A DNA stretch of 64,000 nucleotides from positions 33,914,001-33,978,000 of the forward strand of contig NC_047027.1 of NCBI RefSeq assembly GCF_902652985.1, written 5' to 3'. The DNA comes from Pecten maximus (lineage: Eukaryota). Below are positions 7,601-16,600 of the stretch, one piece after another; position 1 is the stretch's first letter, and every line of letters begins with the position of its first letter. Below the pieces are notes generated by a model. That model ran no database searches, was not told where the DNA came from, and saw nothing but the letters and a program-made list of their open reading frames with translations. A program made the translations under genes and the position numbers.

Positions 7601-10600
7601 TTCCAACCTCAGAATACTACACGTTGTAGACAACGTGAAGTTCCATCTGCATGTAATACTTCTGGAGCGAAGAACACAATGATCTTTACTTATACATGAT
7701 AATATGATAGTTTAATGTTGCTTGTAACCAGCATTTTCACTGGTTTGAAAAAAATGTTTCAACATTTACGCATAAAATGATATTGTCGTTTGTAACGTCA
7801 TTTTTGATGGGTGATAAAGTGGCATGATAATTTCTAAGAGAAAAAGAGTCCATTAATTAAGATAAATGTCATCGGAGTTTTGTAGAGAAGATCATGTCAC
7901 AACAAGTTGTAATTAATTAGCTGTAAAGCTAATGTTGGGAGTTAAAATCGCACTCACCTTGGGTAACTGTATGGATATCCAGGTGACGAGAGGTATTGTG
8001 TAGTTTCCGTAGCGATGATGTATATCTCTGATGCTTCATCACATATACAGTCTGCAAAACGGCAGTAAAATATAACAACGTTAATCGAGACATAGGGTTG
8101 TAATTATTCATTTTACCTGTATATCAATATCTACATGTTTGTAGGTGAATACGATGATTTATCAACCTGATTAAAATTTTATTTCCTTATGCCGAAGGTA
8201 GCAATAACAATGACTATTGTTTTATTATATAACATATCTTATCAGTCCCTAACCTTAGATTGGATAGACGTAACAGAAAAAATGGCGTATGATTGAAAGT
8301 TTGAAGTGAGAATTACAATAACATAATTTTAAACAAGCTCAGTTATAAATAATTCATTCATTTAAATCAATATTGTCTTAAAATCAACTAAATGGTTATA
8401 TGTAAATTATGTGTAACATGATTTCAAATGGAAGTTCATTTTGAAGCATGACGCTGTCAATCACTGTTTCATAAGACTCGATGTTGCAGCGCTTGGTTTT
8501 TAGGTAATTCCGGACAGTGAATAAAATCGATGTCGAGGAAAAGGGAAAAACACAGACGTATAATGATATGTTGTATTATGTCTTGCAAACGACATTTCTC
8601 CCGAATCATGTGAAAATCCCCCAAGGTGAAATATTACTTGAAAAGAATCCCTGGTATTCCAGTTTTCTCGATGGCAGGTAGTGTTGTTTACAATTATGTT
8701 TTATCCAATGCCTGCTTGCTTATTTAATCTATTTTACTAAGGAAACGGAGATTCCGGGACCTCGCATACACCCAACAATGATAGAGCATTTGAGCCGCCG
8801 GCTGGCATTTAGGTCCTTAAGGCATAAAAAATCAAAATTGAGTTTTTGGTATTTTCATAATTTAGAGATAATGGCGGTTAAATTGGTGTAAAAATAACTT
8901 TGGTGTGTCAATAACTGACGATTTGACGCTACATTGAATATATGTCGCATTTGGTATGCTAGATGACGTTGGCGTTAATAACGACGTCATTTTACCAGTG
9001 CCATTTTTGACGTCATTTTTTGCAACGTCATTTATCACAGACAGTTGCATAATGCTTTGCTGTTACAGGTCTTGAATTGAAGACTGTTATTTTGTAATTG
9101 TTATTATTATAATAATATATAATTTTTATCTATAGTCATTTAAAAAGAAAAAAGTCCTTTTTCAGTTGTCATGATTCATTTATTTACAAGGATAAAATTT
9201 GTGATTCACATATCAACTTGAACACAAACAAGTATCTTGCAATAAACAGGTAACATCCCTTGTAATTACACACAAAAACAATCAGTCACATCCCTTACAC
9301 ACAAAAACAATCAGTCACATCCCTTACCTAATACAAAAACAATCAGTCACATCCCTTACCTAATACAAAAACAATCAGTCACATCCCTTACCTAATACAA
9401 ATAACAATCATTTTATATTTTATTTGGTAGAAACAGATTGCAAAGTGAACTCCAGGACTCCATCAGGATTATATTGTTACAATTAATTACATGTAGTGTA
9501 AGAAGATAAAACATTTATTTTGAAATTGTATTTAACTGTATCCTAACAAGCAATGCTCATTTCATAATATAAAATAAAAGCATGAGTACAGTATTTAAGT
9601 TTTCATCAATAACAATTTTGATCTCAACTTTCAGTTCATTCTTCTGTGTGGGTGGGTCTAGAGGTGGGCTGTGGGACAGTGGGCAGGGGACATAGAAGGT
9701 CCTTAGACGGATCCTTTACAAAAGGCCTGATATTTTTGTACAGGTACCATGCACGTTCTGCGGAAAAACCTTTTGCCTCCAGTCTCACTGGCAAACCCTG
9801 TGGAATAATCTTTCCCCTCTTCACAAGCCTCACTGGCGTTGTCTCCCCGTCAACACCTTTTTTAACAGTAACCATTCCTGAAAGAAAGAAACAGGAATGG
9901 CATGTTGTAATTGAACTTAGTTTTGAAAGGGATACACATAAAAATCAAAAAACCTGTACAAAACCATTTTATTTTTAAATCGGATAAAAATTCTGCATGC
10001 CCCACATACCAAATACATCATTAGAATCAGACTCATAAATCTAGCGGAATTACCCATGGAGGTAATTGATAATGAAAGCGCAGTACATTATATAAATTAA
10101 ATGGATTGAAATATGTAAATATAGCAGTACATGTACCTGAAGTGGTGGAAGCAAAGTGAAAGTGATGGTATTTCCCAATACCAGGAACCGCTCTAAATAC
10201 AGGCTTGAAGAATTGTTTCCAGTCTCTCCAGATCCACGAATTTGGTGACATCTCACTGTATAAATCTGCCTGGTTATGTGTGGATGAAGCATGAATTGTC
10301 ATCTTCAGGTCAGACAAACTATCCACATCATTGCGTCTGATTTTCCTTCGGGCAATACCAAACATCCCATCCACAAGACAACGGGCATGATATGGCTTCA
10401 TGAAATGAAGATGGATGTCTTCATGATATCCATTTGCCACTCTCCAAGCCAGATAGCTTGTGACAACCTGAATCATAAAAAAATAAAATTAGGTTCATTG
10501 TATAAAGCAGTGTAAGAACCTGTATTATTAAGTTTATTATATTACTGGCCTGCTTTCTACTAGCATGTCAAAAATAAGACACCTGTATAATAACACTATT

Positions 10601-13600
10601 GTGACTTCACAATTACAAAATTTTGGAGAAATCGGAGATGAGTGGGTATCAACATTCAACAGCTTCAAAAATATGTAACTTATAATTTCATAATGATTAT
10701 GTAATGCTGAATAATTGTTTCAGTACAAAGAAACATACAGCCTGCTCCTTATATTTGCATAACTACCAGTTTTGTGATAAACAGAAACTTACACTGCTGA
10801 CTTTTTTGAATGAATTCAGTTCAACTTGGCAAATGATCTTAACTGATGTGCCACACTCCTTTAAGGTGTTTTCTTAACTCAACAACAAATATTCCATACC
10901 TGATTCTTATTTTGGCCACCACAATTGTCTGCATTCAAGTACACAGTTTTTTCTCCTTCCCCATGGTATTCGAAGAAGTGGTGTAACATAGATACAACAG
11001 CATTGGCCGAGTGGCTCTGGGCACCATCCAGACCAATGGACTGATCCTCGCCAAACAAATAATTTGTTTGCAGGGACCGACCATCATTGCAAATACCAAA
11101 TAGATTAGCTTTATATGGTGACCTGAAAGAAAAAGCTGTACAATATCAGAGAAGCATAGTGTTCAAGATCATTTCTTTTAATTTCAATCCGATATTTTTT
11201 TATTCTGATATTCAAGATTGAAACTTTACATCTTTAATACATGAATTACATTTTATGAAATATGATCCAATACTACAGAGATTTAATGGTTTTAAATGTA
11301 ACCTGTTTTACCTACTGCTTCTCCCTTTTAACAGACTTAAATTGTTTTTTACCTGAAGTACAAAGCTCCTTCCTGTCTGCAATGACTGGGCAGAAGTACA
11401 CTTTGAGCATAATCAAATGTGTAGTGGACATCATTTAGGTCCATGGAAGTTGGAGGAACAGGAACAGTAGACTTTGGATGACCCTGAAGACCTGCAATAG
11501 CAGCATGACATTTTTGTCGATAATGGTCTCTCTCCTTTTGGGCTGATGAAATGTGTTCTGCAAAGTCTGTGCTAGCCTCCATTTTATCTGCCTCAGTGAT
11601 GGCCTAGATACAATATATGTACAAAAATCTTATCTTAACATGTCATCAAAATGTTCTATATACATCGTACATACAAAATGTATATAATGAACCTATAAAA
11701 ATGTATAACAAGATGTTTAAAGCAATAAAAGTTTTCTTTGTAATTTTACTAATAAATTCATACCATTATTGTTATGAATGAATATGAATGTAGAATTATT
11801 ACAATATCACTATCTGTTTATCTAAAATTAGAACACAAATATATTAAGATATTTTGGTTTTAATGTCCATGGATATTAAATTAGACTTGTTTTGATTAGG
11901 TTCTTACCTTCTGTATCCGATTCCTAAAGGATTCACATTTGTGACATACATCTGTCTTGCAGGACATGAACTGGATGTGTGGGAGACACTGGTGCCATAT
12001 TCTTCTGAAAGTGGTCTCAGATAGGCATCGGTTTTCTGTTTCACTGTTGAAAATAGATATGTCACTAGATCATAAAATTGGAGGGTGACGATTATAAACA
12101 ATACTAAAACCAAATAATTCAATGTCATTTCCAAAGTTTGAAATATATTATTTTCATTTTAACAAATAATTTGGACAAATTCTAAGATATCTAGTGATGG
12201 AAGATAATTTATTAGCAGCTTGTTTGTGTTTATAATTAAAGCATACATAGTTAAAAAAAATATTCTTATAGCTAAACCAATTTATAAAGGCATTATTTCA
12301 AATGTTTTATGATTATAAATTAAATGTATCTGTAGACAATATTTAATTCATAACAGTGAAAATTGACACTGGTGTATCATGGATTGCTGTATGAATTGAT
12401 TACCAAGTACTTTTTTCATTATGAGGATAATACTTACATACATACTTGGCTGTATTTCTTATGGACAGATAGATAGGTTTCACTTCCAGGTAAATATATT
12501 GGTGGAAAGCTGTCCCGTCCACGTGGTGCAGCAGGTTGGGGCAATCCCATCTCATCTGCATACCTAACATATAAATGTAACTGCATTAAAAAATAATTAA
12601 CATCAAAATTCATTTCCAAATATCTCATTGTGCTGATAGTAAAATATGTATAATGGAAATTTCGAAACAGACAAGGTCTGTATCAAACTGTGACCTATTA
12701 CAATTGAATGTATGTAAATAAATAATATAGCTATTATACTTCAAAATACATGTACCCGGTATGTTTATATTTAATCAAGGTGACTTGAGATGATTTTTTT
12801 AAATTAAGTTTTGCACATGTTAAGTTAAATTACTAACAGTTGTATTATTTATTTATTTTTCCCCAGCAAAAGAGAACAAAATACAGACTGCACAGATAGT
12901 TTGATGTTAATCATGACATGCACGACAAGTATGAATATTCTACATACAGAACTATGGGTTTCATTTTAATTTTTTTTTTAATGTTAAATACCTGTGTATA
13001 AGTATACATACGGCACAGCACTTACCTTGAAATAAACTGGACAACTTGTTGAACATTATCATAGGTCACTGCATTTTTGGGTTTTTTCCCTGTATTTCCA
13101 TGTATCCGTGGAACAGCACCATTCTTGACGAAATGGGCCCTGATGTTTTTCAAGTAATGTGCATTTATGTTATTAACATAAAGGAAACAAGCCTTGCAAA
13201 CACTTGTGTTCTGGAATTGGTAGTCAAAGCGATGCCGTTTGACGTTAGTTTGACCATGTATTCCCCTTGTCATGCCACATGCCTGGAGCTGTCCAATAAT
13301 TAACATGTCCCTGCCATCTCTCTCCATTCCCTGCACATTCAATCTGTTATCTTTGATATCCATATTGGGAAATTTGGACAGACCCCTTCTTACATTTACC
13401 GAGTTATTTTCGTCGTCATCATCATCATCATCAACCTCGTTGTCATCACTACGTAGTGTGTCTTGATCAGAATCATTTTCTGTGTCCCTTTCAACGTCAT
13501 TTCTGATAAAAACTCTCATCCGAGTATGTAGAATCGGCGAATTAATAACGCTAATGCCGTTACTCACATCATCATCATCATTATCACTCTCGATGTCATA

Positions 13601-16600
13601 GTCAAAATCAACATCTTCATCCTGATTACCGGAGACAGAACTCACCTCTTCAGCTGTACCACAGGTGCCTGACTCGTTTTTATAAAATAATAACATATAG
13701 AGTACATATAAATGAGAAAGGTTCTGAACTCCCCCAGGCTTGAAATCTGATGTATTTATTTCTAAGTACCGTAGCTTCGGTTGTATTGGGTGGATTTTTT
13801 CGAAGTAGGACTTAAATTGAAGAGAAATGGTCAATCTTTAAAATAAGCCATAACATGTTGTCGATTTCTCGATATTAATTTACCAAATCGGGCGTGAAAC
13901 TTCAAAATCCCCTCGATTTTGTTTAGTCGGACAAGTTGACGTAACGGGGTCACCACACTTTGACTCTATTGGACATAGCTTTAAATACGAAGTCCATGGG
14001 TTAATCACGAGGTACGCTTCATCAGATCACCGAATACAACTATTACATACACTTACTTTATGTATACGAGCACCCTATCGACGGCCCCGGGACATTTTAT
14101 GCATACTGATAGCAGATTTTCCACTTGAGTAGCCATGTTGTGTCAGCCGCGGTAAATTTGAACAAGCATTCTGATTGGTTATAGAAAATGTGTTGAACCA
14201 ATCAGAATGCTTGTTCAAATTTACCGCGGCTGACACAACATGGCTACTCAAGTGGAAAATCTGCTATCAGTATGCATAAAATGTCCCGGGGCCGTCGATA
14301 GGGTGCTCGTATACATAAAGTAAGTGTATGTAATAGTTGTATTCGGTGATCTGATGAAGCGTACCTCGTGATTAACCCGTGGACTTCGTATTTAAAGCTA
14401 TGTCCAATAGAGTCAAAGTGTGGTGACCCCGTTACGTCAACTTGTCCGTCTAAACAAAATCGAGGGGATTTTGAAGTTTCACGCCCGATTTGGTAAATTA
14501 ATATCGAGAAATCGACAACATGTTATGGCTTATTTTAAAGATTGACCATTTCTCTTCAATTTAAGTCCTACTTCGAAAAAATCCACCCAATACAACCGAA
14601 GCTACGGTACTTAGAAATAAATACATCAGATTTCAAGCCTGGGGGAGTTCAGAACCTTTCTCATTTATATGTACTCTATATGTTATTATTTTATAAAAAC
14701 GAGTCAGGCACCTGTGGCTGTACCACTGTTTACCCGACTTGTACACGGAAAGAAATGGCTAAAATCATCGTCTATCTCACTTGCTAAATCGTTATCACAC
14801 CCGACTACGTTAAAATTTGGCGGAAGAGACATCATATACGATTTCTTGATGCGTTAGACCTAAACACTCCCATCTGCCATCTTCGTAGCGAATGTAAACA
14901 ACTACGTAAATACCGGAAGTGTGTTCGGCAGAAAACGGGGAAACCCCATTCGCGTCAATATTTTTGTTGAATAAACACTTTTATTTACATTTACCGTTAA
15001 TGTTATTGAATGGAAAATTAACAGACATATCTAAAGTTTAAGGACAGGTATTTAAAGTTCATCTATAACAAAGTATATCAGCTGCATTTTGTGTTTTTGC
15101 AACGCAAGTGGGATTCCCGTTTTCGCGCGAAACGGAAATAGAATGGAAATAATAACTCTGACGGAATTCCCTTTTTTCTCCGTTTTCATTGGATAGAACT
15201 TAAGGACCTAAATGCCAGCCGGCGGCTCATTTGTGGCCCAACTAGCTTTCAAGCTTATCACTATACTGACAGAGTGAAAAGGGAGGTAACTCTGTTGAAT
15301 GAGCATATCCGTAGGTGCTGATTAGATAATTGTTTAATATCATCACGAACCCATACCTATTCCTTTTTTAATAACATTTTTTTATAGTGTAAGATTGACT
15401 TTATTACTATTCAGTAATGCCCTAAATCAACGGCATCATTTTGATGATTCTTGAATTAAAAGATGTCCATCTGTCACCAGAAATGCTAGCTACTGAGAAC
15501 ATTGATAGACTCAATTAGTTAATACAAAAACAATTAAGAATATCGACATGATAACAATGGTAAGAAGTAAATATCGATGTTACATATCATTTGTATGGCA
15601 AGATTTGCTTCATTTGAATATGGATATTGTTCGGAATATGTAATTGATGCTCTGTCGAAACCTTAAATTGAAAATTCTGAAAAATAAATTTATGATCTTT
15701 TGCAACTCCTGATGAACATTTGGACATTTCTTTGGATAATCTAGTCTATATAGTTACGAACGCCTCCTAGGCTTCACAACTTTAGGCCCTTAATATTACT
15801 GAATGATTCCATGATGACAAAACAACCGTATGGTGCAGTTTATTTCAATTTTCGCTCTTATGTTTATACAGTATCAAACTCCAAATTTATACTGAAATGA
15901 GATAATGTATTGTTTTTTCTTCAATATATTTTAAAAGCACGAATAGAAAAATATCACAGTGAAATGAACCAAACATACCTTCCTCCTCATATGATATGTT
16001 AAAACCTCTGCCGACGATACCGCCATCTGATGTGAACAAGATTGTAACGTCCTTGCTTGGAATTACACGTACTTTAGGGGAAGACATTTGAAGGATTTCT
16101 CTCTCGGTATCTAGTAAATATTTGAAGACTTATTTCGATAATAAATATATCTACTTATTGACAGTCTTAAACTTTATGCACAGAATAATGTGAAATATAA
16201 AAAATGAATTCTGTAGAATTAATCATTTCCGATTGCAAATCGTGCCAAAATGCTGATTATCCAATAACGAGCTCACGAAAACTGGTACTACTGTCGTGGC
16301 GTTTTTAACGTTATAACGATTTTGATGCAAAACAAAATCAGCATGGACCTGTATATAATGTTGGTGGGATTAAGACACAACATTGCTTATAATAACATTG
16401 CCTAGAAGATTTTCGGAGAAACCCTTCTTTTTTTTTTTTTTTTATTATTTTCAAAAATCATCATTACATACCGTATGTTAATATGGCGTGGTCGTAATTG
16501 TGTTCGAGATCAAATGACATGATCTCAATGCGTATCAGGCCACAAGCATTTTTGTCGGATATTCTCCAATAACACTGGCGATTGCTGTTGATATATATAT

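What the first reader, a model, noticed from the sequence alone, without database searches (positions are those of the whole stretch)
13653..14723. 1.06-kb near-perfect palindrome is a nested Galileo/P-like foldback transposon
Seen: 521-bp arms, 15-bp loop, CAC..GTG ends and a 7-bp TSD GCTGTAC; precise removal restores the host transposase frame, which shows it is an insertion. Established: Galileo (P superfamily) has long TIRs, CA termini and 7-bp TSDs near GTAGTAC; this site matches 5/7. Three-level nesting (foldback in Sola in host intron). Inference: any transcript through it forms a 521-bp dsRNA stem (siRNA/ADAR substrate) and the DNA can extrude a cruciform.
Basis: partly seen in the sequence, partly recalled or inferred. 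Interest (0 to 1): 0.78.

Follow-up and report, generated by a model that had tools for sequence, protein, structure and literature searches.

The report
P-type foldback transposon in scallop
The 1-kb palindrome is a real, recently mobile, non-coding leftover of a P-element-type jumping gene (just its two long end repeats joined head to head) that landed inside another transposon's gene in the great scallop genome; it is a well-documented new family of a known kind, not a new kind of element.

Summary
Window 13660-14716 is a 1,057-bp palindrome with 521-bp arms (2 mismatches) and a 15-bp spacer, flanked by a 7-bp duplication GCTGTAC.

It is a true insertion. Four of 4 paralogous copies of the host element carry the uninterrupted site with one GCTGTAC.

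It is one copy of a young family: 72 forward and 68 reverse termini in the genome. Of 45 two-ended copies, 40 have identical 7-bp flanks and one has an 8-bp repeat.

The same termini bound a 6.7-kb copy. Its interior matches a truncated chromosome-10 copy that encodes a P-type transposase.

A sister family (10.9 kb, 604-bp perfect inverted repeats, CACAGGT ends, 7-bp duplications) has an intact 785-aa transposase. Its predicted fold matches Drosophila P transposase far better than anything else.

So "P-like, Galileo-like in architecture" is supported. Membership of Galileo itself is not: no THAP domain was found in 0 of 30 clade members.

The only cognate transposase gene in the assembly is broken. 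The host being Sola is consistent but not directly tested, the intron location is untested, and dsRNA and cruciform formation are predictions only.

The genome is Pecten maximus. Other first-stage notes on this genome mention foldbacks, but none could be tied to this family.

The parts
13653..13659 (.). Left copy of the 7-bp target-site duplication GCTGTAC
   Evidence: It is present once in 4 of 4 paralogous empty sites.
13660..14180 (.). Left arm, 521 bp (one long terminal inverted repeat, terminus CACAGGT...)
   Evidence: It is 97-100% identical to copies at 40 scored places of 617 candidates. Its first 80 nt are identical to the terminus of the 6.7-kb copy L045.
14181..14195 (.). 15-bp spacer. 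Read on the minus strand it continues the inverted repeat of the longer relative, so the element is repeat positions 1-536 joined to repeat positions 521-1.
   Evidence: the inverted repeats of L045 run 577 bp, and their continuation after position 521 is homologous to the reverse complement of the spacer. No spacer variants were seen in 18 copies.
14196..14716 (.). Right arm, 521 bp, reverse complement of the left arm except at 14379 and 14449
   Evidence: Three further differences from the family majority are mirrored on both arms (13878/14498, 13884/14492, 14094/14282).
14717..14723 (.). Right copy of the 7-bp target-site duplication GCTGTAC
14724..14835 (-). 5' end of the interrupted host ORF: 37 codons from the first ATG, then the codon that spans the insertion site
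   Evidence: frame with lowest codon coordinate 14725.
13022..13659 (-). Continuation of the host ORF downstream of the insertion (acidic region, then a conserved part). It is in phase with 14724-14835 once 1,064 bp are discounted.
   Evidence: No Pfam hit for this exon. A later exon at 10036-10476(-) hits DUF7869 (PF25273) at 1.5e-9.
8792..15228 (-). Host transposon (Sola1-like by structure). It has about 30-bp inverted ends and is flanked by a 4-bp duplication ATTT at 8788-8791 and 15229-15232. It is 5,373 bp without the insert.
Evidence: One search, using a 500-bp probe from its interior, gave 18 further matches in the genome besides the window's own: 10 cover the probe at 93-96% identity and the other 8 are weaker or partial.

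Best explanation
The palindrome is a non-autonomous 'two-repeat' deletion derivative of a P-superfamily DNA transposon of the scallop Pecten maximus. Everything between the two long terminal inverted repeats of the parent was lost. What remains is repeat positions 1-536 on one side joined to positions 521-1 on the other, which gives 521-bp arms and a 15-bp spacer.

It moves by cut-and-paste. A P-type transposase (RNase-H fold with an insertion domain) supplied in trans recognises the CACAGGT... termini and integrates the element with cuts staggered by 7 bp. It has a weak preference for a palindromic RTnnnAY target.

This copy landed near codon 38 of the transposase gene of a Sola1-like transposon and interrupts it.

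Shown here: the insertion, the 7-bp duplication, family membership, derivation from long inverted repeats, the link of those repeats to a P-type transposase gene, and the homogenisation of the two arms within copies.

Inferred: which transposase mobilises it now, since the only cognate gene in the assembly is broken and a 50%-identical sister family has intact genes. Also inferred: that central deletions arise during gap repair or by palindrome instability, and that transcripts would fold into a 521-bp duplex.
For: Insertion: 4 of 4 paralogous host copies read through the site with a single GCTGTAC.

Family:
- 72 forward and 68 reverse termini in the genome.
- 22 copies of 1,055-1,059 bp among 30 loci fetched.
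- Copies differ by about 3 per 521 bp.

Target duplication: 40 of 45 two-ended copies have identical 7-bp flanks and one has an 8-bp repeat. T stands at position 2 in 26 of 40 and A at position 6 in 29 of 40. Galileo makes 7-bp duplications, rarely 8-bp, with consensus GTANTAC, and P makes 8-bp ones (PMC4168063, passages).

Link to a transposase:
- L045 (6,697 bp, duplication ATCCAGT) has the same first 80 nt and 577-bp inverted repeats.
- Its interior is 98.5% identical to a chromosome-10 copy on both sides of a 5.67-kb segment. That segment has no inverted ends or duplication of its own, and L045 replaces it with short filler.
- The segment encodes ORFs of 495 and 285 aa, collinear with residues 1-476 and 496-769 of the sister transposase. 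PF21787 matches at 4.7e-15.

Sister family:
- 10,923 bp with 604-bp, 100% identical inverted repeats.
- Termini identical to the window element at 14 of the first 18 nt.
- 7-bp duplications at 2 of 2 copies examined.
- Seven two-ended copies in the genome.

P-type transposase:
- A profile of 30 clade members hits Drosophila P transposase 6p5a at 4.6e-8 in three collinear stretches that include the DEM, D..H..K..RN and NSDxxE motifs.
- The AlphaFold model (pLDDT 76.5) hits 6pe2_A at E 1.3e-19 with target TM 0.72. The next best fold is at 1.5e-4 with TM 0.39 or less.
- PF21787 is found in 30 of 30 members and the GTP-binding insertion domain PF21788 in 9 of 30.

Not an assembly artefact: short-read contigs from independent runs cover the element, including its centre (record 6 of X1, 14151-14225).
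Against: - The cognate transposase is a single copy, lacks its left arm, and has a frame break. No working partner is demonstrated in this assembly.
- The arms of L045 and the chromosome-10 copy are only 95% identical to the foldback's arms. They are cousins of the direct parent, not the parent itself.
- No THAP domain was found in 0 of 30 clade members at E 0.01, although THAP is described as typical of P-superfamily transposases (PMC4168063, passages).
- Single-sequence searches of the PDB found nothing. PF12017 found nothing in the genome, though the control rang nowhere either.
- Five of 45 copies lack a 7-bp duplication.
- 7-bp duplications also occur in some hAT families (PMC4455052, passage).
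- The sister family's terminus has 3 mismatches in positions 1-11, so it fails Repbase's shortcut rule for placing the two together (for the rule, for the sequences).
Confidence: 0.88

Rival explanations
1. Assembly or long-read artefact: the palindrome is a chimeric 'foldback' read product and not real DNA.
For: Foldback artefacts of long reads exist (PMC12870357, title and abstract start seen in the listing). The assembly is PacBio-based (PMC7191990, passages).
Against: The same 1,057-bp structure sits at 22 of 30 fetched loci with locus-specific 7-bp duplications. The ends are precise and paralogous sites are empty. Contigs from independent runs cover the arms and the centre.
Confidence: 0.01
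2. The element belongs to another cut-and-paste superfamily (hAT with 7-bp duplications, Transib/RAG-like because of CACAG...GTG ends, or Foldback/MuDR). On this view the P-type gene inside the chromosome-10 copy is an unrelated passenger.
For: Some hAT families have 7-bp duplications (PMC4455052, passage). The termini resemble a CACAGTG-type heptamer (recalled). Only one transposase-bearing copy exists and it is truncated.
Against: - The 5.67-kb coding segment has no ends or duplication of its own, and L045 lacks it with a filler junction, which marks a deletion and not an insertion.
- An independent sister family with an intact gene inside 604-bp repeats shares the CACAGGT terminus and the 7-bp duplication.
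- Both families keep the same gene order: Pif1-like, transposase, PHD.
- The transposase model matches P far better than Hermes (1.9e-4), Transib (6.4e-4) or RAG (7.5e-4).
- Transib's 5-bp and Foldback's 9-bp duplications (both recalled) do not fit.
Confidence: 0.04
3. Same element, different driver: the foldback copies are mobilised today by the intact transposase of the sister 10.9-kb family (cross-mobilisation), not by a cognate enzyme.
For: - The sister family has seven two-ended copies at about 100% identity with 785-793-aa open frames.
- 14 of the first 18 terminal nt are shared.
- The cognate gene is broken and single-copy.
- Foldback copies are 98-100% alike, so movement was recent.
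Against: The transposases are only 48-62% identical. The repeats diverge completely after about 18 nt. About a third of the genome is not in the assembly (C-value against 918 Mb, PMC7191990 passages), so an intact cognate copy may simply be unassembled or segregating.
Confidence: 0.3
4. Beyond being a transposon, this copy acts as a hairpin-RNA source (siRNA or editing substrate), or re-wires the host transposase through the outward-reading frame in its arm.
For: The predicted RNA fold is -978.2 kcal/mol with 520 of 521 arm positions paired. Contigs of one RNA-seq library cover parts of the family (X17).
Against: There is no evidence that this locus is transcribed. RNA-library contigs may be DNA carry-over and cannot be assigned to one of more than 70 copies. 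No excess of A>G was seen (X17: one A>G and three T>C among 11 changes), and contigs hide rare variants in any case. The arm's frame starts with TTG in the tool's bacterial table; the only ATG is 13 codons from the end.
Confidence: 0.1

Closest known systems
Galileo (Drosophila; P superfamily, foldback-like)
   Same: Long terminal inverted repeats of hundreds of bp. 7-bp (rarely 8-bp) target duplications with a palindromic T..A core. Many copies consist of the two repeats only. Other elements are often nested inside. The transposase is of the P type. (PMC4168063 passages; here.)
   Different: The host is a bivalve, not a fly. No THAP domain was detected (0 of 30). The arms here have no internal tandem repeats. 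The autonomous relatives are 10.9 kb or longer and carry two extra ORFs, a PHD protein and a Pif1-like helicase. The target consensus is weaker (RTnnnAY against GTANTAC). Clade membership was not tested because no Galileo protein was at hand.
P element and its MITE BuT5 (Drosophila repleta group)
   Same: A non-coding derivative of about 1 kb mobilised in trans by a P-type transposase (PMC3698922, title and abstract start in the listing). The fold and catalytic motifs of the transposase match Drosophila P.
   Different: P makes 8-bp duplications (PMC4168063 passages) and has short inverted repeats (31 bp, recalled). Here the duplication is 7 bp and the whole element is inverted repeat.
Foldback (FB) elements of Drosophila and Mutator/Foldback elements such as Tm1
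   Same: Near-complete palindromes that can form hairpins, with many internally deleted copies.
   Different: FB elements are allied with MuDR and make 9-bp duplications (recalled; PMC3169594 seen only as title and abstract start). Here the duplication is 7 bp and the linked transposase is P-type.
THAP9 / Pdre-type P-like elements of vertebrates
   Same: P-type transposase outside insects (PMC10983969, abstract start in the listing).
   Different: Those proteins carry THAP, which this clade does not show. No long-repeat foldback derivatives were seen in the abstract start of PMC10983969, which was all I read of it.

Membership tests
P superfamily of DNA transposons | Transposase with the P-element-type catalytic core (RNase-H fold split by an insertion domain, DDE motifs) | tested here: met
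   For the cognate chromosome-10 ORF, PF21787 matches at 4.7e-15. For the clade: the profile hits 6p5a at 4.6e-8 in three collinear stretches; the model hits 6pe2_A at E 1.3e-19 with target TM 0.72 over 504 columns, and the next fold is at 1.5e-4; PF21787 is in 30 of 30 members and PF21788 in 9 of 30.
P superfamily of DNA transposons | 7- or 8-bp target-site duplication | tested here: met
   40 of 45 two-ended copies have identical 7-bp flanks, 1 has an 8-bp repeat and 4 have none. For the sister family, 2 of 2 copies have 7-bp duplications.
P superfamily of DNA transposons | The non-autonomous element shares termini with an element that encodes the transposase (Repbase rule: same duplication length, positions 1-11 with at most 1 mismatch; PMC4455052 passage) | tested here: met
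   The first 80 nt are identical to L045. The interior of L045 equals the interior of the transposase-bearing chromosome-10 copy at 98.5%, and that copy ends in the same right arm. Against the sister family there are 3 mismatches in positions 1-11, so the two are separate families.
P superfamily of DNA transposons | N-terminal THAP DNA-binding domain (typical of P, Galileo and THAP9; not the classifying feature) | tested here: not met
   0 of 30 clade members hit THAP at E 0.01. There are weak RFX-type winged-helix hints instead: PDB 8zjr_M at 0.0019 and PF02257 in 1 of 30. The upstream exon structure was not examined.
Galileo family (Drosophila) | Transposase falls in the Galileo clade on a tree with P, 1360 and THAP9 | not tested
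Galileo family (Drosophila) | Long inverted repeats, 7-bp duplication near GTANTAC, two-repeat copies | tested here: met
   The repeats are 521-604 bp. The duplication is 7 bp with T at position 2 in 26 of 40 and A at position 6 in 29 of 40. The window element itself is a two-repeat copy. The consensus is weaker than Galileo's.
Foldback (FB)/MuDR-type foldback elements | 9-bp target duplication and a MuDR-related transposase (recalled) | tested here: not met
   The duplication is 7 bp and the linked transposase is P-type.
Transib / RAG-like | 5-bp target duplication (recalled) and a Transib-type transposase | tested here: not met
   The duplication is 7 bp. The model matches Transib only at E 6.4e-4 with TM 0.39, against P at 1.3e-19.
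Sola superfamily (for the host element, not the palindrome) | 4-bp target duplication (recalled) and a Sola-type DDE transposase | tested here: inconclusive
   There is a 4-bp duplication ATTT and about 30-bp inverted ends. The length without the insert is 5,373 bp, against a Sola1 mean of 5,445 bp in bivalves (PMC10294476 passage). The protein hits only DUF7869. No Sola reference protein or profile was available.

The most novel reading that the evidence does not exclude
The foldback is the visible tip of a mollusc-wide, undescribed branch of the P superfamily. Its autonomous members are 10.9 kb or longer and have 500-600-bp perfect inverted repeats. They encode three co-diverging genes: a P-type transposase that has swapped THAP for another DNA-binding module, a PHD-finger protein, and a Pif1-family helicase. 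The helicase may be what lets an element with kilobase-scale hairpin-prone ends be cut, repaired and kept symmetrical. That would explain the mirrored variants on both arms and the series of mini-palindromes.
Probability: 0.3. Interest if true: 0.6.

Novelty: new member of a known kind. Interest (0 to 1): 0.4.

Why it matters
The practical yield is an annotated, very young P-type transposon system in Pecten maximus, with several parts.
- A foldback family whose termini occur 72 (forward) and 68 (reverse) times in the assembly.
- Its mini-palindrome derivatives.
- A decayed cognate autonomous copy.
- A sister family with seven nearly identical long copies and intact open frames, which may still be active.

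A curated survey of bivalve cut-and-paste transposons listed no P elements in its manual library (PMC10294476, passage). These families therefore fill a gap and give a candidate active transposase from a mollusc.

The copies also offer a natural data set on how kilobase palindromes survive in an animal genome. Arms within a copy differ by 1.2 per 521 bp on average, against 3.1-3.3 between copies. There are 12 mirrored variants against 20 single-arm ones. Two single-arm copies break within 2-3 bp of the arm-spacer boundary.

None of this overturns current views of P or Galileo biology.

Tried and rejected
- Searching the genome for PF12017 (Tnp_P_element) gave nothing, and the control rang nowhere, so the result is uninformative.
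- Single-sequence phmmer of the two chromosome-10 ORFs and of the 785-aa sister protein against the PDB gave no relevant hit. Only the profile and the fold search reached P transposase.
- L043 and L044 (7.4 and 6.8 kb between family termini) looked like autonomous candidates, but their interiors are unrelated to each other and to L045. L043 is a foldback with a nested insertion of about 6.3 kb flanked by an 8-bp duplication of element positions 475-482.
- L003 and L017 (one arm only) are not longer elements. Their downstream sequences are unrelated.
- The skip of 1,064 bp seen in read contigs (X1, X6, X5) is not evidence of an empty allele at this locus. Those contigs carry the variants of paralogous host copies (14792 T>C, 14800 C>T).
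- Read depth and base changes from contigs were not used to argue for expression or editing.
- No repeated motifs that could mark transposase-binding sites were found in the arm (0 direct families, 4 weak inverted pairs).
- Literature searches for a described bivalve or mollusc P-like foldback element and for P-superfamily elements carrying Pif1 or PHD genes found nothing relevant. Repbase itself and the papers' supplementary files could not be seen, and they may hold such entries.
- The intron claim and the Sola claim were not pursued further.
Full report
WHAT IS THERE

One search reports one inverted repeat in 12500-16000, with arms 13659-14180 and 14196-14717 and 15 nt between them. My own comparison shows two mismatches, 13927/14449 and 13997/14379. 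It also shows that the outermost pair belongs to the flanking duplication. The element is therefore 13660-14716 (1,057 bp): 521-bp arms, a spacer at 14181-14195, and ends CAC...GTG. GCTGTAC stands at 13653-13659 and at 14717-14723. The 17-nt terminus occurs twice in the window, against 0.01 expected by chance.

IT IS AN INSERTION

On the minus strand, a 37-codon ORF starting at the ATG at 14833-14835 runs to the right-hand junction. The ORF 13022-13657 continues from the left-hand junction. The two are in phase once 1,064 bp (the element plus one duplication copy) are discounted. I read the frames separately and built no joined sequence.

The host element is itself a repeat. A 500-bp probe from its interior gave 18 further matches besides the window's own; 10 of them cover the probe at 93-96% identity and the other 8 are weaker or partial. 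All four copies that I could still fetch read straight through the site with a single GCTGTAC.

THE FAMILY

One arm plus the spacer finds copies at 97-100% identity in 40 scored places of 617 candidates. The 30-nt terminus, allowing up to 2 mismatches, occurs 72 times forward and 68 times reverse. The reversed control pattern occurs 0 times.

- Among 30 fetched loci, 23 have both ends and 22 of those have a perfect 7-bp duplication.
- Adding 3 long copies and 19 short copies gives 45 two-ended copies. Of these, 40 have identical 7-bp flanks.
- The five exceptions are L043, which has an 8-bp repeat, and L021, L059, L060 and L061, which have none. L060 and L061 share their flanks and lie 2.5 kb apart, so they look like a local duplication.
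- The target is weakly palindromic, RTnnnAY: T at position 2 in 26 of 40, A at position 6 in 29 of 40, a purine at position 1 in 28 of 40, and a pyrimidine at position 7 in 27 of 40.

Size classes are as follows.
- 22 copies of 1,055-1,059 bp.
- A few copies of 637-825 bp.
- 16 mini-palindromes of 77-137 bp, each with its own central junction and 30-60 bp kept from each end.
- Three long copies.

Independent DNA runs show many skips of about 950-996 bp, that is, more mini forms.

ORIGIN OF THE PALINDROME

L045 (C11:39320795-39327491, 6,697 bp, duplication ATCCAGT) has the same first 80 nt and inverted repeats of 577 bp at 99.5% identity. After position 521 its repeat continues with a sequence homologous to the reverse complement of the window's 15-bp spacer. 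The 1,057-bp element is therefore repeat positions 1-536 joined to repeat positions 521-1. It is a two-repeat deletion derivative of an element with longer inverted repeats.

THE TRANSPOSASE

A genome search with PF21787 gave 44 matches. One lies 7 kb from an unpaired right terminus on chromosome 10.

- The chromosome-10 copy ends in a right arm that is 95% identical to the window's.
- It matches the interior of L045 at 98.5% on both sides of a 5.67-kb segment that L045 lacks.
- That segment has no inverted ends and no duplication of its own. At the junction L045 carries a short AAT-repeat filler. L045 is therefore an internal-deletion derivative.
- The segment holds minus-strand ORFs of 495 and 285 aa and a plus-strand 618-aa ORF with a PHD finger.
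- L045 also has a Pif1-like ORF next to its left repeat.
- The 495-aa ORF carries PF21787 at 4.7e-15.
- The gene is single-copy in the assembly, and the copy lacks its left arm.
- The two ORFs align to residues 1-476 and 496-769 of the sister protein, so the frame is broken between them.

A SISTER FAMILY CLINCHES THE LINK

The nearest paralogues, at 48-62% identity, are intact 785-aa genes. They sit in a 10,923-bp element (C1:29543249-29554171) with 604-bp inverted repeats that are 100% identical. Its terminus shares 14 of the first 18 nt with the window element. Both copies checked have 7-bp duplications, GTCAGTG and GCCTAGC. Seven two-ended copies exist. The gene order, Pif1-like then transposase then PHD, is the same as in the L045/chromosome-10 composite.

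IS THE TRANSPOSASE OF THE P TYPE?

- 56 homologues were found. The named ones come from bivalves and a gastropod.
- PF21787 is present in 30 of 30 aligned members, PF21788 (the GTP-binding insertion domain) in 9 of 30, and THAP in 0 of 30.
- The profile's best PDB hit is Drosophila P transposase, 6p5a, at 4.6e-8. It aligns in three collinear stretches covering the catalytic motifs.
- The AlphaFold model (mean pLDDT 76.5) hits 6pe2_A at E 1.3e-19 with target TM 0.72. ISCth4, Hermes, Transib and RAG follow at 1.5e-4 or worse, with TM 0.39 or less.

COMPARISON WITH WHAT IS KNOWN

The following comes from passages of PMC4168063. Galileo belongs to the P superfamily and has long, foldback-like inverted repeats. 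It makes 7-bp (rarely 8-bp) duplications with consensus GTAGTAC, GTANTAC or GTATTAC. It includes copies made of two repeats only, and its transposase has a THAP domain.

The scallop family shares the architecture, the duplication length and part of the target motif. It differs in four respects:
- no detectable THAP domain;
- the extra ORFs of its relatives;
- a weaker target consensus;
- its host.

I did not test clade membership. I therefore file it as a P-superfamily element that works like Galileo, not as a Galileo.

ARM HOMOGENISATION

In 18 copies of exactly 1,057 bp, the two arms of one copy differ at 1.22 positions on average. Arms of different copies differ at 3.1-3.3 positions. Twelve distinct variants are mirrored on both arms, and 10 of these occur in one copy only. 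Twenty variants are on a single arm.

The window copy has three mirrored pairs and two single-arm changes. Some process copies one arm onto the other about as often as mutations arise. My inference is heteroduplex repair between arms, either during gap repair after excision or in a hairpin or cruciform. This was not tested.

READS

Only contigs were available. They confirm the family, its centre and its mini forms in other data sets. They say nothing firm on transcription, editing or polymorphism at this locus. The computed RNA fold is -978.2 kcal/mol.

HOST AND GENOME

The host element spans 8792-15228. It has about 30-bp inverted ends and a 4-bp duplication ATTT. One exon hits DUF7869.

The assembly statistics match Pecten maximus xPecMax1 exactly: 918,306,378 bp, 3,983 scaffolds, a largest scaffold of 60,076,705 bp, and another of 44,824,366 bp (PMC7191990 passages).

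VERDICT

This is a new member of a known kind and of moderate interest, mainly for the likely active sister family and its unusual gene content.

Noticed in passing
L071/L067/L072 = G000:C1:29543249-29554171 (also C11:569689-580613, C2:21873956-21885066, C4:32443905-32455239, C35:20834-32803, C17:30081254-30097234; 4.2-kb derivative at C5:19013401-19017587): Sister P-type family: 10.9 kb, 604-bp inverted repeats 100% identical, 7-bp duplications, and copies about 99.6% alike over 10 kb. Intact ORFs for a 785-aa transposase, a 617-aa PHD protein and a 356-aa Pif1-like helicase. It looks currently or very recently active.
   Followed up: partly
L045 1620-2639(+), L046 5084-6940(+), L067 1638-3491(-) and 8259-9329(-): Both P-type families carry a Pif1-like helicase ORF (PF05970 at 2e-28 and 1.5e-29) and a PHD-finger ORF, in the same order around the transposase. 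The three genes have co-diverged, which suggests accessory genes and not captured passengers. No report of this was found in print. Repbase and supplementary files were not seen.
   Followed up: partly
L050-L066 (e.g. G000:C2:43945511-43945619, C16:18237857-18237972): Sixteen mini-palindromes of 77-137 bp that keep 30-60 bp of each terminus. Each has a different central junction, and 13 of 16 have a 7-bp duplication. They may be independent central deletions or aborted gap repair. Many more such junctions appear in read contigs.
   Followed up: partly
L003 (G000:C4:17550893...) and L017 (G000:C8:438734...): Single-arm copies that stop at element positions 538 and 534, within 2-3 bp of the arm-spacer boundary at position 536, and continue into unrelated DNA. 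This is compatible with breakage at the palindrome centre or with rearrangement there.
   Followed up: no
L043 = G000:C7:37011182-37018569: A foldback copy with an insertion of about 6.3 kb in its left arm, flanked by an 8-bp duplication of element positions 475-482. The copy itself is flanked by an 8-bp repeat and not a 7-bp one.
   Followed up: no
window 13022-13834 (-) and 14542-14787 (+): Each arm contains a stop-free frame that reads outward through the terminus. On the minus strand it runs in phase into the host ORF. The only ATG in it lies 13 codons before the end.
   Followed up: no
proteins P0016 and P0020: Two homologues at 47-49% identity are labelled 'MAG: hypothetical protein [Sedimenticola sp.]' and sit on contigs of 10 and 7 kb. 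A P-type eukaryotic transposase in a bacterial bin probably reflects animal-host DNA binned with a symbiont.
   Followed up: no
L045 4686-5238 / L046 7864-8438: Tandem repeats with a period of about 145 bp inside the long element, next to its right inverted repeat (offset matches). They recall the internal repeats described for Galileo (PMC4168063 passage).
   Followed up: no
window 8792-15228: The host transposon family is young. A 500-bp probe gave 10 full-probe matches at 93-96% identity. The window copy differs from four paralogues at 14792 and 14800.
   Followed up: partly
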